A stretch of DNA of 31,403 nt, from positions 845,759 to 877,161 of the forward strand of contig RQSC01000028.1 of the NCBI GenBank assembly GCA_013416795.1, given 5' to 3'. Position 1 is the stretch's first letter, and each line of letters begins with the position of its first letter. Both the position numbers and the translations under genes were made by a program. The stretch is from Prasinococcaceae sp. CCMP 1430. Lineage: Eukaryota; Plantae; Prasinodermophyta. The notes below the pieces were generated by a model. It was not told the origin of the DNA, searched no databases, and saw only the letters and a list, made by a program, of their open reading frames with translations. Positions 1,814 to 31,290 of the stretch are shown in pieces.

Positions 1814-2662
1814 ATGCTGGAGCGCGACTTGGCCTGCCTGCCCGAGGTCGCGGAGTGGAGTGGCGCCCCGGTGCCCGCCTTCGATGGCAACGGCAATGCC
1901 GGTGCCCATGCCGACGCCGGGGTGGACGCACCCGCCTTTGACCTTGAGGTCGACGTCGACGTCGACGGCTACGCAAATGACGACGCTAAGCGCGCGCGCG
2001 AGCTCGTGGCAGGCGCTGCCGTCGCCACTGCCGTCGCCACAGCCGCTCAGCCGTCACTGAACGGAGGAGGGGGGGCGTCTCCAGCCAACGAAGACTGTGC
2101 GCCCGATCAAACGCTGGAGCGGCAAAGGCGCACGTCATCACGTGTTCCACCGTCCGCTGCGGCCGCGCCACCAGCGCAAAAGGAGGAAGGCACGGGTCCG
2201 CGAGGCGATGATGGCGGCCCGAAGAAGAGAAGGCGCGAGTGCACGCTCGCCGAGGGCATTCGTCGTCTGTTTGGCCCGCGCGGGGAGCCCACCCCAGAGG
2301 CGACGGCTCGCCTCAAGCCGCATCGCGCGTTTGCCAACCTCAGGAACAAACGCGCGCGCGCGCCCGTGCCGAGCGCGCTGAGCGAGGGTTGCAGCGGGCC
2401 CCGCTGGCGCGCGCTGGCCGCCCGCGGTATGGCGGCGCGCATCGACGACGCCGATGTGCCATGCATCGACCCGTGCACCGACGGCGCCGCCGAGGTGGCC
2501 GCCGAGCGAATGGCCATCGCCCTGTGCAAGCAGGAGCACAGGGCGTCGCGCGTCAAGGTGTGCGCGGCGGTCTCTGCGGGCGCCGATGAGCTCAAGCGCG
2601 CCATCCGGCAGCTCCGTGGTGAGGTCGAGCCGCCCGAGCGGCGCCCGCGCGCCGCTGCGTGA
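1814..2662 (+). CDS. hypothetical protein with a basic NLS-like patch (PKKRRR)
   Basis: GCCGCCGCCATG start context just after the N at 1793; open to TGA at 2660-2662. The C-terminal half has normal globular composition. No family recognised. Confidence 0.55.
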   Translation: MLERDLACLPEVAEWSGAPVPAFDGNGNAGAHADAGVDAPAFDLEVDVDVDGYANDDAKRARELVAGAAVATAVATAAQPSLNGGGGASPANEDCAPDQTLERQRRTSSRVPPSAAAAPPAQKEEGTGPRGDDGGPKKRRRECTLAEGIRRLFGPRGEPTPEATARLKPHRAFANLRNKRARAPVPSALSEGCSGPRWRALAARGMAARIDDADVPCIDPCTDGAAEVAAERMAIALCKQEHRASRVKVCAAVSAGADELKRAIRQLRGEVEPPERRPRAAA

Positions 2663-12407: not shown

Positions 12408-12539
12408 ATGGCGTCCGGCGGGGCGCCGCACATCGAGCTGCTCGGCGTCGCGTCGCTCGCCGAGCAGCTCGACCGCAAGCTGCTCGTGCAGACGCGAGAC
12501 GGTCGGACCGTCGTGGGGAGGCTGCGGTCGTTCGACCAG
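12408..12539 (+). CDS. LSM1: Sm-like protein LSM1, first exon only (rest lost at the gap 12660-12759)
   Basis: MASGGAPHIELLGVASLAEQLDRKLLVQTRDGRTVVGRLRSFDQ matches the Sm1 motif of LSM1 (SL.E.LD+KLLV..RDGR...G.LRSFDQ); followed by a GT donor at 12540. Confidence 0.85.
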
Positions 12540-13115
12540 GTGGGCCCGCGCGAGCTCCTCGCCGGCGCGCGCGCGCGCGCGCGCACACCGACACACCTCG
12601 CGTGGCTTTGCGCCCCGAGCGCCTCCGCGCGTGTGCGCGCTCGGCGCTCGGCGGGCGCGNNNNNNNNNNNNNNNNNNNNNNNNNNNNNNNNNNNNNNNNN
12701 NNNNNNNNNNNNNNNNNNNNNNNNNNNNNNNNNNNNNNNNNNNNNNNNNNNNNNNNNNNGCGCGGCTGCCGCCACCCCGTGCCTCGCCGCCACCGCCGCC
12801 GCCGCCATCTCCTGCGAGGGAGGACGGGAAAGGGGCCGCGCGCGCGCCCGCCGCCACGCCGCGCGCGTGTGGCGCTACCACGGGCACCGCTGCACCCCCC
12901 GCGCGCTCATGCTCGAGGTATCGGTTACGTATTTAGGGTGATGTCCCGCCTCACACAATTCAAAAACATATGAACATGCTCAGCCCTCGGCCGAAAATAT
13001 TGCCTTTTGATTAGGATTCAAAGACGGTAGGGTCTTTGAATGTTGCGGAAGGCGTACAACCACGAGGGCGCGCCACACAGCGCGCGCGGCGGTGGCGCGG
13101 CCAAGGTGGGCTAAG

Positions 13116-13331
13116 GGGGGGGGGGGAGGCACGGGGTCCTCGGGCCCGCTCGATCGGAAGGTAGGGAGGCTGGTGCGGTCGGTCACCGCGGAGCCTTCGA
13201 GGAGGGCTAGGAGGAGGCGAACAGCCGCGCGCGGGCGGGGCGCGCGCGTAGGGGTGCCATGGGCGCGCTGGCAGGGTCACTGGCGGGTTCGCAGCGTGCG
13301 CGGCGCATGACGCCGGTGGCGGCGGAGGGGG
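13116..13331 (+). repeat. 216-bp exact direct repeat, copy 1 (copy 2 at 17716-17931)
   Basis: Base-by-base identity from the poly-G run through ...GGCGGAGGGGG, at an offset of 4600 bp. Confidence 0.95.
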
Positions 13332-15650: not shown

Positions 15651-16939
15651 CCGACTNNNNNNNNNNNNNNNNNNNNNNNNNNNNNNNNNNNNNNNNNNNN
15701 NNNNNNNNNNNNNNNNNNNNNNNNNNNNNNNNNNNNNNNNNNNNNNNNNNNNNNNNNNNNNNNNNNNNNNNNNNNNNNNNNNNNNNNNNNNNNNNNNNNN
15801 NNNNNNNNNNNNNNNNNNNNNNNNNNNNNNNNNNNNNNNNNNNNNNNNNNNNNNNNNNNNNNNNNNNNNNNNNNNNNNNNNNNNNNNNNNNNNNNNNNNN
15901 NNNNNNNNNNNNNNNNNNNNNNNNNNNNNNNNNNNNNNNNNNNNNNNNNNNNNNNNNNNNNNNNNNNNNNNNNNNNNNNNNNNNNNNNNNNNNNNNNNNN
16001 NNNNNNNNNNNNNNNNNNNNNNNNNNNNNNNNNNNNNNNNNNNNNNNNNNNNNNNNNNNNNNNNNNNNNNNNNNNNNNNNGCCCCGTTGGCGCGGCGCGC
16101 CGCCGGCGCCAAACGCGAAATCTGCGCGGCCCGGCGCGATCCGGGCCACACGCGCGCGGGGGGGCGCGCGCGGCGGAAAGAGGGTCTGAGAAAATACGAA
16201 TCAAAATGTAATTATATATATGTGGAAAAGGAAGAGAGGTTGGGGTGGGAGAGAATACCGTAAAGGCGGTGCGGTGCGGTGCGCGCCGCGCGCGAGCGCG
16301 CGAGCGCGGGCCGGAGCGGAAGTGCGCCGGGCACGAGGCCGGAACTCGGAAGAAGAAGCCGCCGTCGGCCGGCCGGTGCGGAGGACGGGTAGGCCACAGA
16401 CAGACGGACAGCGGCAGCAAGTGAGGCGCGTGCGTCGCGCGACACACGCCTCCGCCTCGTGGCTCGTGCCGCGCGTGGGCGTGCTCCCGTCCTCTACAAC
16501 AACCTTGGTATAGCCAAAATGCCCAACCCCGGGTACAGTAACCATCTGAAGGTACGATCGAAGGCTCGAAGCTCTTCTCGTTTCAAGTTGATTGGAAACT
16601 TGACGTGGGGGAGAGTTAGGGTAGACCCTGGTGTCGCGGGCGGCGGGCGGCCCGGCCCGACCGGGCGGCTCTCGCCGCAGGAGGCGGGCGTCGGAGGCGC
16701 GAGGAGGAGGGCGGCCGCGCTCGGCGAGGCGGGAAGCTCGGGCGGCGCCGCAATCGGACGGTGGGAAGCACGGGACGGCGAGCCTCGGGAAGAGCGTGCG
16801 AGCGCAGCGTCCTGCGCGCTCGCTGCGCAGCCGCGGCAGTACAGTCGAACTTACAAAAGCGCTGGCGTCGCCGCGCCGGCGCGCCTCCGCAGCGCCATCC
16901 CCTCCCTTGCCTCCCGTGCGAAGATGCGCTCACGGGTTG

Positions 16940-16990
16940 CTCGGCGCCGCGCCGCGGACTGATTCGTCCCTTTCGGCGGCGGCGCGTCAT
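16940..16990 (-). promoter_or_regulatory. eukaryotic SECIS element (type II-like) in the 3' UTR of the selenoprotein gene
   Basis: Minus strand reads AUGA-C-gcgccgccgc-cg-AAA-gggac-gaauca-gucc-gcggcgcggcgc-C-GA-G: UGA/GA quartet, about 10-bp GC helix II, unpaired AAA 13 nt after AUGA, and an apical ggac/gucc ministem. It lies between the TAG (17048) and TGTAA (16851-16855). Helix I is not clearly resolved. Confidence 0.8.
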
Positions 16991-17047
16991 GTGGGCCTCG
17001 GGAGGGGGGCGCGACGGCGGCGACGGACCCAGAAGCGCCGTGCGCTC

Positions 17048-17648
17048 CTACTTGCCCGCAGCAGCTACGGCGACGTCCTCCAGCGACGCGTGCGCGCCGG
17101 TGGCCTCATCGAAGTGCCGCAGGAGCTCTTCCTCGCCGCAGAAGACGAGCGTGCCGCCCTGCTGAAGACCCTGCGATTGGCGCGGCGGCAGCCACGGCTT
17201 CCACTTCGGCAGCACGTCCGCGAGGTCGGCGGCGCCGTCCGAGGTGAGGCGGTCGAGGATGGACAGCGGCGTCTCCGCGCGGAGGAAGGTGCGCTCGACG
17301 CCGCGGTAGAGCCCAAGCGCGTCGTACGCGGCGTTCTCCGGGTCGGCGTACAGGTTCTCCGCGGGAAAGCCCGTGTGTTCGCTGAACTCGACGGCGCGCT
17401 CCCGCGTGCCGATGGAGCAGAAAAGCAGCTTGACGCCGGCCTCGTCGAGGCGCGGCTTGAGGTCCCTCGCAAGCTGCTTGGCCTGCTCCTGGCAGAAGAA
17501 TCAGCCAAAGGAGCGGCCGAACACCAGCACGGCCGTCTCGTCGGCGCCCCACTCGGCGCGCAGCTCGCGGTGCTCGCCGCTCGCGGCGTGGTAGACGCGA
17601 ATGCCGGCGAGCGCGCCGTACGCGCCGCCGGCGGGCGCAGGCGCGGGC
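17048..17648 (-). CDS. SELENOU: selenoprotein U-like AhpC/TSA (PRXL2-type) thioredoxin-fold protein with in-frame UGA = Sec at 17501-17503; 5' end lost in the gap
   Basis: Own translation: ...ETAVLVFGRSFG*FFCQEQAKQL...GVKLLFCSIGTRERAVEFSEHTGFP...LYADPENAAYDALGL...QSQGLQQGGTLVF...HFDEATGAHA...*. The TGA sits exactly at the first Cys of the family's CxxC motif, and the frame continues about 150 codons in family-like sequence. Confidence 0.85.
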
Positions 17649-17715
17649 NNNNNNNNNNNNNNNNNNNNNNNNNNNNNNNNNNNNNNNNNNNNNNNNNNNN
17701 NNNNNNNNNNNNNNN

Positions 17716-17931
17716 GGGGGGGGGGGAGGCACGGGGTCCTCGGGCCCGCTCGATCGGAAGGTAGGGAGGCTGGTGCGGTCGGTCACCGCGGAGCCTTCGA
17801 GGAGGGCTAGGAGGAGGCGAACAGCCGCGCGCGGGCGGGGCGCGCGCGTAGGGGTGCCATGGGCGCGCTGGCAGGGTCACTGGCGGGTTCGCAGCGTGCG
17901 CGGCGCATGACGCCGGTGGCGGCGGAGGGGG
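17716..17931 (+). repeat. 216-bp exact direct repeat, copy 2
   Basis: Identical to 13116-13331; begins immediately after the N-run 17649-17715. Confidence 0.95.
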
Positions 17932-18455
17932 GGGCTGTGGCGAGGCCGCGCGCGCGGTCTCGCGCGGCGCGACACCGTGGCGCGCGCTGCGTGCGCTCGA
18001 GCGCCGCGGCCGCGCCGGGTGAGGGGGGAGGAGGCGCCGAGGACAGCGCCGGCAGCGGCGGCAAAGGCAGCGGGGAGCAGCAGCAGCGACGGAAGAAGAA
18101 GAACGCCTTCACGCACTTCGAGGTGGAGACGGCCGTGCCACCCACGAAGCGGCTCGGCCTCCACCCGTTTTTGCGCAACACGCAGTGCGGCGACAACATC
18201 ACCGTCGACGAGCGCGACTACATCGTGAACAAGGTGAGCAGGCGCCGCACAGGCCGCTGCGAGCGCCCGTCTGGCCGCCCACCGCGCTTCCTGCGGACGC
18301 CGCGTTTCCTGACGCTGCCTCCTGCGCCACAGGTGACGTACGTGTACAAGCTCACGCGCGGGAGGTACGTCAAGGACAATCGCAAGCTCTCCGTCACGCC
18401 AGTCGGGCGGCACGTGACCAACATGTTCCTCTCCTCGCTGTATGAGGACAGTTGA
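17859..18455 (+). CDS. conserved green-lineage plastid-type protein of unknown function (intron 18234-18332)
   Basis: Arg/Ser/Ala-rich N-terminus. An in-frame GTGAGC...CACAG intron gives DYIVNK|VTYVYKLTRGRYVKDNRKLSVTPVGRHVTNMFLSSLYEDS*, resembling a plant/algal family with Y.L..G.Y...L.V...GR...N.L..L..S; the family name was not verified. Confidence 0.7.
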   Translation: MGALAGSLAGSQRARRMTPVAAEGGAVARPRARSRAARHRGARCVRSSAAAAPGEGGGGAEDSAGSGGKGSGEQQQRRKKKNAFTHFEVETAVPPTKRLGLHPFLRNTQCGDNITVDERDYIVNKVSRRRTGRCERPSGRPPRFLRTPRFLTLPPAPQVTYVYKLTRGRYVKDNRKLSVTPVGRHVTNMFLSSLYEDS

Positions 18456-31151: not shown

Positions 31152-31290
31152 GGGCGCGTGGCGCAGTGGATTAGCGCATCAGACTTCGGAGGCAGGAAGG
31201 GCCCATCTCTCTTCCGCCAAAGCTATCTGAGGGTAAACGGCTGCACTGCAACGCCTTTCCTCATCGCGGGTTCGAACCCCGCCGTGCTCG
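31152..31290 (+). tRNA. trnR-UCG: tRNA-Arg(UCG) with two introns: 31190-31224 (35 nt, position 37/38) and 31235-31264 (30 nt, variable loop 47/48)
   Basis: Removing both inserts gives a full cloverleaf: acceptor GGGCGCG/CGTGCTC+G73, D arm GCGC/GCGC with the GG loop, anticodon stem TCAGA/TCTGA with loop CT-TCG-GA, variable loop GGGTC, T arm GCGGG-TTCGAAC-CCCGC. A poly-T run follows 7 nt downstream. Confidence 0.93.

What the first reader, a model, noticed from the sequence alone, without database searches (positions are those of the whole stretch)
16851..17648. Hidden selenoprotein: UGA recoded as Sec in a UxxC redox motif, with a matching SECIS
Seen: the frame reads GRSFG-TGA-FFCQE and continues in AhpC/TSA-like sequence to TAG 17048. 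58 nt later comes an AUGA...AAA...GA stem-loop with an apical ministem, then TGTAA. The ORF track misses this protein. Established: PRXL2/SELENOU proteins use (C/U)xxC, eukaryotic Sec insertion needs a 3' UTR SECIS, and green algae have selenoproteomes while land plants do not. Inference: a functional, possibly plastid-targeted, selenoprotein U that standard annotation would truncate or call a pseudogene.
Basis: partly seen in the sequence, partly recalled or inferred. Interest (0 to 1): 0.75.

Follow-up and report, generated by a model that had tools for sequence, protein, structure and literature searches.

The report
Mis-annotated SelU-type selenoprotein gene
The internal "stop" codon in this gene of the marine green picoalga Prasinoderma coloniale almost certainly encodes selenocysteine in the active site of a SelU/peroxiredoxin-like redox enzyme; this enzyme type is already well known in marine algae, so the news is that the public gene model cuts the active site out.

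Summary
The minus-strand frame 17647-17048 has one in-frame TGA (17503-17501) in G-R-S-F-G-U-F-F-C-Q-E. The part after it matches Pfam AhpC-TSA_2 (1.1e-19). A type II SECIS-shaped hairpin (16998-16933) starts 57 nt after the stop, followed by TGTAA.

All 94 related algal loci that cover this column carry TGA there; land-plant relatives ("AAED1, chloroplastic") carry Cys. An independent contig of a 98.7% identical strain keeps the TGA and has no change in the SECIS. The 15 codons before the TGA differ from a sister species mostly by synonymous changes.

Rfam finds no SECIS here, but it also misses the hairpins of 11 orthologues. My own covariance models give only modest scores.

The published model PRCOL_00004664 removes 36 nt (17524-17489), including the Sec codon, as a false intron. 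Its start codon lies at 12808, displaced by what looks like an assembly error.

Sec-containing SelU is among the commonest algal selenoproteins, and this scan has already reported similar genes in this genome, including another SelU-like one. The result is sound but ordinary. Plastid targeting is plausible but unproven.

The parts
17504..17647 (-). Coding sequence before the Sec codon (48 codons, open at its 5' end where the assembly gap begins). It encodes the N-terminal beta-hairpin and the strand leading to the active site.
   Evidence: Translation. It is 62% identical to exon 1 of the sister-species orthologue. The 15 codons before the TGA compare with L001 as 7 identical, 7 synonymous and 1 non-synonymous.
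17501..17503 (-). TGA read as selenocysteine, first residue of the U-F-F-C redox motif.
   Evidence: The same codon is at the same column in 74 + 20 related loci. Cys occupies this column in land-plant homologues. The TGA is kept in an independent strain contig, L097.
17051..17500 (-). Coding sequence after the Sec codon (150 codons), AhpC-TSA_2 domain.
   Evidence: Pfam PF13911 at 1.1e-19, 71.3 bits against a cut-off of 27. 138 homologues found.
17048..17050 (-). True stop codon TAG.
16933..16998 (-). Type II SECIS element: AUGA 16990-16987, helix II of 11 bp with one bulged C, AAA 16973-16971, 4-bp ministem, 6-nt loop, GA 16942-16941.
   Evidence: Fold. It is the only pattern hit in the window, against 0.15 expected. 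It is the top hit of model R1, 17.9 bits, E 0.007. It is invariant in L007 and L097 while the spacer before it varies. Orthologues have the same architecture with covarying stems.
16851..16855 (-). TGTAA, the probable green-algal polyadenylation signal, 87 nt after the SECIS.
   Evidence: 10 sites in the window, 4.9 expected. L001 has TGTAA about 140 nt after its SECIS. Its role as a poly(A) signal rests on knowledge from Chlamydomonas and was not tested here.
17489..17524 (-). 36 nt (GT...AG) that the published gene model removes as an intron. They encode V-F-G-R-S-F-G-U-F-F-C-Q.
   Evidence: P0121 (PRCOL_00004664-RA) aligned to the window by tblastn. The corresponding stretch is present in the MMETSP transcript ORF of the orthologue P0001, which starts at M-F-C-Q.
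17649..17715 (.). Run of 67 N that hides the 5' end of the gene.
12760..12808 (-). Probable displaced first coding exon (M-A-A-A-A-V-A-A-R-H-G-V-A-A-A-A, open into a 100-N gap). It is the only place in the window that encodes the start of the published model.
   Evidence: The orthologue starts with a comparable Ala/Arg-rich presequence.
17716..17931 (.). 216 nt exactly identical to 13116-13331, bounded by poly-G runs. This ties the 12760-13115 piece to the gap in front of the gene.

Best explanation
This is a functional nuclear gene of Prasinoderma coloniale for a SelU/PRXL2-family (AhpC-TSA_2) thiol-selenol oxidoreductase. It is the algal counterpart of the land-plant 'AAED1, chloroplastic' proteins. 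During translation the UGA at 17503-17501 is read as selenocysteine, directed by the type II SECIS hairpin in the 3' UTR (16998-16933) through the usual eukaryotic route (SBP2, eEFSec, tRNA-Sec). Sec sits at the junction between a beta-strand and the following helix of a thioredoxin/peroxiredoxin fold. It is the attacking residue of a U-x-x-C pair, and the Cys three residues on resolves the selenenylsulfide. Shown here: the codon, its conservation, the fold family and the hairpin. Inferred: actual Sec insertion, the substrate (peroxide or disulfide), and organelle targeting by an Ala/Arg-rich presequence whose coding exon is displaced by an assembly error.
For: Family: Pfam AhpC-TSA_2 at 1.1e-19. 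Column: plant homologues read G-C-x-C-C-W-E where the alga reads G-U-F-F-C-Q-E. Conservation: 74 loci have RS[FY]G-TGA-xxC-[QW]E and 20 more have RSFG-TGA-FFASE; none has a Cys codon. About 50 database proteins start right after the TGA, and some loci show two abutting gene calls split at it. Not an error: L097, an independent assembly 98.7% identical with 14 substitutions, keeps the TGA and the frame. Selection: the 15 codons before the TGA compare with L001 as 7 identical, 7 synonymous, 1 non-synonymous. SECIS: the only consensus-pattern site in 62.8 kb, against 0.15 expected. It has 0 changes in 66 nt, against 4 in the 49-nt spacer, between strains. Orthologue SECIS alignment: 93% paired, 8 of 11 pairs with double changes, 0 of 500 shuffles as good. 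AUGA-to-AAA spacing is 12-14 nt in the orthologue sequences and 13 in the window. The top hit of a model built without the window or its closest relative is this site. Structure: in the AF2 model of the Cys homologue P0071 (pLDDT 83.8), the Cys lies between strand 53-61 and helix 65-83. The best PDB match is human prostamide/prostaglandin F synthase (PRXL2B), whose C44S/C47S mutant marks the same CxxC pair. Organism and context: P0121 is EukProt Prasinoderma_coloniale PRCOL_00004664-RA. The genome paper reports many selenoproteins in this alga (PMC7455551). SELENOU is among the four most widespread algal selenoproteins (PMC7539508).
Against: Rfam's SECIS models give no hit at gathering score, nor at E <= 10 on 301 nt. 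The control shows they also miss 11 orthologous elements. My second covariance model ranks the site third (15.5 bits, E 0.037), behind two plain GC hairpins. The fold energy is no better than shuffles in this 70% GC sequence (z = -0.58). I found no transcript of this species covering the TGA. The start codon is not contiguous with the gene in this assembly. Sec machinery genes were not checked by me; only unverified earlier notes mention SPS and SBP2. No selenium incorporation data exist.
Confidence: 0.93

Rival explanations
1. The published gene model is right: 17524-17489 is a real 36-nt GT-AG intron, the TGA never reaches the mRNA, and the protein has neither Sec nor Cys at the active site.
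For: The stretch begins with GT and ends with AG, and the model PRCOL_00004664-RA uses it.
Against: The 36 nt encode the most conserved motif of the family, present in all 94 loci and aligned to the plant G-C-x-C-C-W motif. GT and AG are simply the Val and Gln codons. The MMETSP transcript ORF of the orthologue starts inside the equivalent stretch, at M-F-C-Q, and transcript-length contigs L010 and L011 keep the TGA. A redox enzyme without its redox motif, yet followed by a conserved SECIS, makes no sense.
Confidence: 0.03
2. This is a pseudogene or a base-calling error: the ancestral Cys codon (TGC/TGT) was hit by a mutation or misread.
For: A single base separates TGA from TGC or TGT. The assembly around the gene is poor, with gaps and a duplicated piece.
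Against: The same TGA is in an independent assembly of a slightly different strain and in every orthologue. The frame is under purifying selection on both sides. The gene has no other stop or frameshift.
Confidence: 0.02
3. UGA terminates translation here. Only a short N-terminal peptide is made, and the downstream domain is untranslated or made from an internal start.
For: UGA is a standard stop in this nuclear code. Gene finders call the downstream part as a separate ORF in relatives.
Against: The window's downstream piece has no Met codon at all. The fold needs both halves: the strand before and the helix after the Sec column. A SECIS-shaped element is conserved downstream in many lineages.
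Confidence: 0.02

Closest known systems
Selenoprotein U (SELENOU/SelU) of marine algae, e.g. Ostreococcus tauri, O. lucimarinus, Thalassiosira pseudonana, Chlamydomonas (PMC2375036, PMC3473315, PMC7539508)
   Same: AhpC-TSA_2/Prx-like2 domain, Sec at the first position of a (U/C)xxC motif, and a 3' UTR SECIS. It is present as Sec in aquatic algae and as Cys in land organisms.
   Different: Nothing in kind. This is the copy in Prasinoderma coloniale (Prasinodermophyta). I did not align it to the named Ostreococcus entries, so orthology to those particular genes is inferred from the shared RSFG-U-FFC-[QW]E motif in metagenomic picoalgal loci.
Land-plant 'thioredoxin-like protein AAED1, chloroplastic' (PRXL2C-like; e.g. 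P0053, P0071)
   Same: The closest named homologues (36-45% identity over the domain). They have the same domain, with Cys exactly at the Sec column and an N-terminal extension annotated as a chloroplast transit peptide.
   Different: They have Cys instead of Sec and no SECIS. The motif is C-x-C-C rather than U-x-x-C. The W-K-P-W-L-P-P insertion of the algal proteins is absent.
Human prostamide/prostaglandin F synthase, PRXL2B (PDB 9US9, 9USA)
   Same: Best structural match of the modelled Cys homologue (Foldseek E 5e-10, TM 0.74 on the target). Same family, with a CxxC pair (C44/C47) at the strand-helix junction.
   Different: Only 22-24% identity. It is a Cys enzyme. Its prostamide substrate is not expected in an alga. 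The comparison was made with a plant-like homologue, not with the algal protein itself.
BCP/PrxQ-type peroxiredoxins (e.g. Sulfolobus Bcp4 3HJP, Xanthomonas PrxQ 5IIZ)
   Same: Next-best structural matches. The reactive residue sits at the same position and the resolving Cys is close by in the same helix.
   Different: 10-16% identity. They lack the family's C-terminal Q-Q-G-G and T-G-x-H motifs. They are not selenoproteins in those organisms.

Membership tests
SelU / PRXL2 (Pfam AhpC-TSA_2, PF13911) | Domain match above the curated threshold | tested here: met
   71.3 bits against a cut-off of 27, E 1.1e-19, for the piece after the TGA.
SelU / PRXL2 (Pfam AhpC-TSA_2, PF13911) | (U/C)xxC redox motif aligned with the Cys of Cys-containing members | tested here: met
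   G-U-F-F-C-Q-E aligns with G-C-I-C-C-W-E of plant AAED1 proteins.
SelU / PRXL2 (Pfam AhpC-TSA_2, PF13911) | Thioredoxin/peroxiredoxin fold with the reactive residue at the strand-to-helix junction | tested here: met
   AF2 model of the natural Cys homologue P0071, pLDDT 83.8, with Cys64 between strand 53-61 and helix 65-83. The top PDB match is PRXL2B. This is indirect, because the algal protein itself was not folded: it cannot be passed through the stop.
Eukaryotic selenoprotein gene | In-frame UGA at a column that is Sec or Cys in homologues, with coding conservation on both sides | tested here: met
   94 of 94 informative loci have TGA. Plants have Cys. Substitutions before the TGA are 7 synonymous to 1 non-synonymous.
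Eukaryotic selenoprotein gene | SECIS element in the 3' UTR: AUGA/GA quartet, helix II, unpaired AA at the right distance | tested here: met
   All consensus features are present. It is the unique pattern hit in the window, against 0.15 expected. It is invariant between strains. It has the same architecture as the covarying orthologue elements.
Eukaryotic selenoprotein gene | Recognition by curated or trained SECIS covariance models | tested here: inconclusive
   Rfam gives no hit but also none for 11 orthologue elements. My own models give 17.9 bits, E 0.007, rank 1 and 15.5 bits, E 0.037, rank 3. SECISearch3 was not available.
Eukaryotic selenoprotein gene | Sec machinery (tRNA-Sec, eEFSec, SBP2, PSTK, SepSecS, SPS2) in the genome | not testable with these tools
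   Only this window is readable. The genome paper reports many selenoproteins (PMC7455551). Earlier unverified notes list SPS and SBP2 genes.
Eukaryotic selenoprotein gene | Selenium actually incorporated | not testable with these tools
   Needs 75Se labelling or mass spectrometry.

The most novel reading that the evidence does not exclude
This is the selenocysteine form of the protein that land plants keep as chloroplast AAED1, which would make it a selenoprotein imported into the green plastid. Marine algae appear to hold it strictly as Sec (94 of 94 loci, none Cys). That set includes a branch that has lost the resolving Cys (U-F-F-A), which would point to a one-selenol, peroxidase-like mechanism rather than a dithiol-type oxidoreductase.
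Probability: 0.35. Interest if true: 0.35.

Novelty: new member of a known kind. Interest (0 to 1): 0.22.

Why it matters
The result corrects a public gene model (PRCOL_00004664) that lacks the N-terminal hairpin and the whole active site. It adds one correctly read gene to the selenoproteome of a deep-branching green lineage. It also gives a clean Sec (alga) to Cys (land plant) pair for a chloroplast-annotated redox protein whose function is unknown even in plants. It reveals no new biology: Sec-containing SelU has been known in green algae since the 2000s and is one of the most widespread algal selenoproteins.

Tried and rejected
- **Rfam SECIS families.** No hit in the window at gathering score, nor at E <= 10 on 301 nt. 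I rejected this as evidence against a SECIS, because the same search misses all 11 orthologue elements.
- **Thermodynamic stability.** The hairpin is no better than shuffles, which is uninformative at 70% GC.
- **MAFFT alignment of SECIS hairpins.** Loops and 3' strands were misaligned, so I used a four-sequence seed and model-guided alignment instead.
- **Second covariance model.** It did not separate the site from plain GC hairpins.
- **Protein search with the 48-residue N-terminal piece**, to find a contig bridging the gap: no candidate.
- **PDB sequence search with the family profile:** nothing at E <= 0.01.
- **Supplementary Table 22 of the genome paper** (the selenoprotein list) is not held as text, so I cannot say whether this gene was already counted there.
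- **Bacterial promoter/terminator scan** of the 3' region: nothing, as expected for a eukaryote.
- The pieces on either side of the TGA were searched separately by reference. The joined read-through protein was neither searched nor folded; a natural Cys homologue was folded instead.

Full report
**What is there**

On the minus strand, the frame starting at 17647 runs for 200 codons:
- 48 codons, then TGA at 17503-17501 in the context G-R-S-F-G-TGA-F-F-C-Q-E
- 150 further codons
- TAG at 17050-17048

The frame is cut at its 5' end by a run of 67 N (17649-17715). The mechanical ORF list shows only a 55-residue GTG-started fragment in this frame.

The 150-residue piece after the TGA matches Pfam AhpC-TSA_2 (PF13911), the PRXL2/SelU domain, at 1.1e-19 (71.3 bits; cut-off 27). 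The joined read-through protein was neither searched nor folded.

**Organism and published model**

The 90%-identity cluster that holds the closest database fragment includes EukProt entry Prasinoderma_coloniale PRCOL_00004664-RA (P0121, 173 aa). It is identical to the window over 162 residues. This confirms what earlier notes of this scan say about the genome.

The model reads ...G-A-D-E-T-A-V-L|E-Q-A-K-Q-L.... It removes 17524-17489 (36 nt, GT...AG) as an intron. Those 36 nt encode V-F-G-R-S-F-G-U-F-F-C-Q, the whole active site. A second supposed intron removes the conserved N-terminal hairpin (Y-G-A-L-A-G-I-R-V-Y-H-A-A-S-G-E).

**Is the TGA a Sec codon?**

- The best ~50 homologues are marine metagenome or MMETSP proteins of about 150 residues that begin M-F-C-Q-E, directly after the TGA.
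- In several loci the gene finder calls two abutting genes split at the TGA.
- I fetched 96 related loci. 74 have RS[FY]G-TGA-x-x-C-[QW]E in frame and 20 more have RSFG-TGA-F-F-A-S-E. None has a Cys codon there. Of the other two, L007 does not reach the column and L016 starts 16 codons before its TGA, too few for the script's pattern.
- Land-plant homologues ('thioredoxin-like protein AAED1, chloroplastic') have Cys at exactly this column: G-C-x-C-C-W-E.
- L097 is an independent Logan assembly of a strain 98.7% identical over 1112 nt, with 14 substitutions. It keeps the TGA and the frame, so a sequencing error is excluded.
- Against the sister-species orthologue L001 (74% protein identity), the 15 codons before the TGA are 7 identical, 7 synonymous and 1 non-synonymous. 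The frame is therefore translated up to and across the TGA.
- The MMETSP transcript ORF of that orthologue starts inside the stretch that the published model treats as an intron. Transcript-length contigs of another orthologue carry the TGA.

**The SECIS**

The hairpin at 16998-16933 has these features:

| Feature | Position |
|---|---|
| AUGA core | 16990-16987 |
| Helix II | 11 bp with one bulged C |
| AAA | 16973-16971 |
| Ministem | 4 bp |
| Apical loop | 6 nt |
| GA | 16942-16941 |

This is a type II SECIS.

Support:
- A pattern scan built on the standard consensus finds this site and no other on both strands of the window. Sixty dinucleotide shuffles give 0.15 sites per window. The filter was written after I had seen the site.
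- Between the window and L097 there are 4 substitutions in the 49-nt spacer after the stop, 0 in the 66-nt SECIS and 7 further downstream. L007, a TARA scaffold, is also identical over the SECIS.
- Orthologues have hairpins of the same architecture but different sequence, 38-170 nt after their stops. In an 11-sequence model-guided alignment, 93% of cells pair and 8 of 11 pairs show double changes. The covariation score is 0.60 against 0.20 in shuffles (0 of 500), and it collapses when the partner column is slid. That alignment was fitted to the structure.
- The AUGA-to-AAA spacing is 12-14 nt in the orthologue sequences and 13 in the window.

Weaker points:
- Rfam gives no SECIS hit. It also misses all 11 orthologue elements, so this blank says nothing.
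- A model built from four orthologues, without the window or L001, ranks the site first in the window (17.9 bits, E 0.007).
- The 11-sequence model ranks it third (15.5 bits, E 0.037), behind two GC hairpins that lack AUGA and GA.
- The fold energy is not better than shuffles.

TGTAA at 16855-16851 fits the green-algal poly(A) signal; that role is from my own knowledge, not tested here.

**Fold and mechanism**

I folded a natural Cys homologue (P0071) with a 29-sequence alignment (pLDDT 83.8). The Cys at the Sec column lies between strand 53-61 and helix 65-83, the classical reactive position of thioredoxin-fold enzymes.

The best solved match is human prostamide/prostaglandin F synthase (PRXL2B, 9USA/9US9). 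Its C44S/C47S mutant names the equivalent CxxC pair. BCP/PrxQ peroxiredoxins come next.

The likely chemistry is attack by the selenolate on a peroxide or disulfide, followed by resolution by the Cys three residues later. This is inferred.

**The 5' end and the assembly**

- The published model starts M-A-A-A-A-V-A-A-R-H-G. In the window this is encoded only at 12808-12776 on the minus strand, next to a 100-N gap. That position is downstream of the gene body, which is impossible for one transcript as the window stands.
- The 216 nt just beyond the gene's gap (17716-17931) are exactly identical to 13116-13331. Both ends of the repeat lie in poly-G runs.
- The simplest reading (about 0.7) is that the piece 12760-13331 belongs in the 17649-17715 gap. 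The frame would then run from the ATG at 12808 straight into 17647.
- The orthologue supports this. Its first exon is a single open frame with a 35-residue Ala/Arg-rich, acid-free presequence, followed by the same conserved hairpin.
- Such a presequence, and the 'chloroplastic' label of the plant homologues, make organelle targeting plausible but unproven.
- A search for a bridging contig with the N-terminal piece found nothing.

**What is known**

- Sec-containing SelU is reported in O. tauri, O. lucimarinus and T. pseudonana (PMC2375036) and in Chlamydomonas (PMC3473315).
- SELENOU is one of the four selenoproteins found as Sec in more than half of 36 algal genomes (PMC7539508).
- The P. coloniale genome paper states that the alga has many selenoproteins (PMC7455551). 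Its table could not be read.
- Earlier follow-ups of this scan have already reported about a dozen mis-modelled selenoprotein genes in this genome, including another SelU/PRXL2-like one on other DNA.

**Verdict**

The gene is a further member of a well-known kind. Its value is a corrected gene model and a flagged assembly error. Interest is low.

Noticed in passing
window 13116-13331 and 17716-17931; gaps 12660-12759 and 17649-17715: An exact 216-nt duplicate 4600 nt apart, bounded by poly-G runs, one copy abutting an N gap. The start of the published SelU model (12808-12776, minus) lies beside the other copy. This looks like a misplaced contig that really fills the 17649-17715 gap.
   Followed up: partly
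loci L031, L035, L038, L043, L044, L057, L062, L065, L070 and their duplicates (20 loci): A branch of the same algal family has RSFG-TGA-F-F-A-S-E. Sec is kept but the resolving Cys is replaced by Ala, which suggests a one-selenol mechanism in that branch.
   Followed up: no
window 31152-31290 (+): Rfam tRNA hit (41.5 bits) stretched to 139 nt by two inserts; ARAGORN does not report it.
   Followed up: no
window 2382-2479 (+): ARAGORN calls a 98-nt tRNA-Ala(GGC), which Rfam does not list at gathering score. The stretch is a strong GC hairpin that also scored with my SECIS model. It is probably not a tRNA gene.
   Followed up: no
window 17859-18455 (+) and 13259 onward (+): A plus-strand ORF starts inside the duplicated 216 nt (M-G-A-L-A-G-S-L-A-G-S-Q-R-A-R-R-M-T-P-V-A-A-E-G) and continues differently in the two copies. 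Only the 17859 copy runs into non-repetitive, protein-like sequence. It would be the divergent neighbour of the SelU gene, about 450 nt from its start codon.
   Followed up: partly
window 12408-12545 (+): By eye, an ATG-started frame reading M-A-S-G-G-A-P-H-I-E-L-L-G-V-A-S-L-A-E-Q-L-D-R-K-L-L-V-Q-T-R-D-G-R-T-V-V-G-R-L-R-S-F-D-Q looks like the first exon of an Sm/LSm-type protein, between two assembly gaps.
   Followed up: no
L053 178-251 and L058 268-341: A tRNA gene (60.4 bits) lies about 650 nt upstream of the SelU orthologue in two related metagenomic picoalgal contigs.
   Followed up: no
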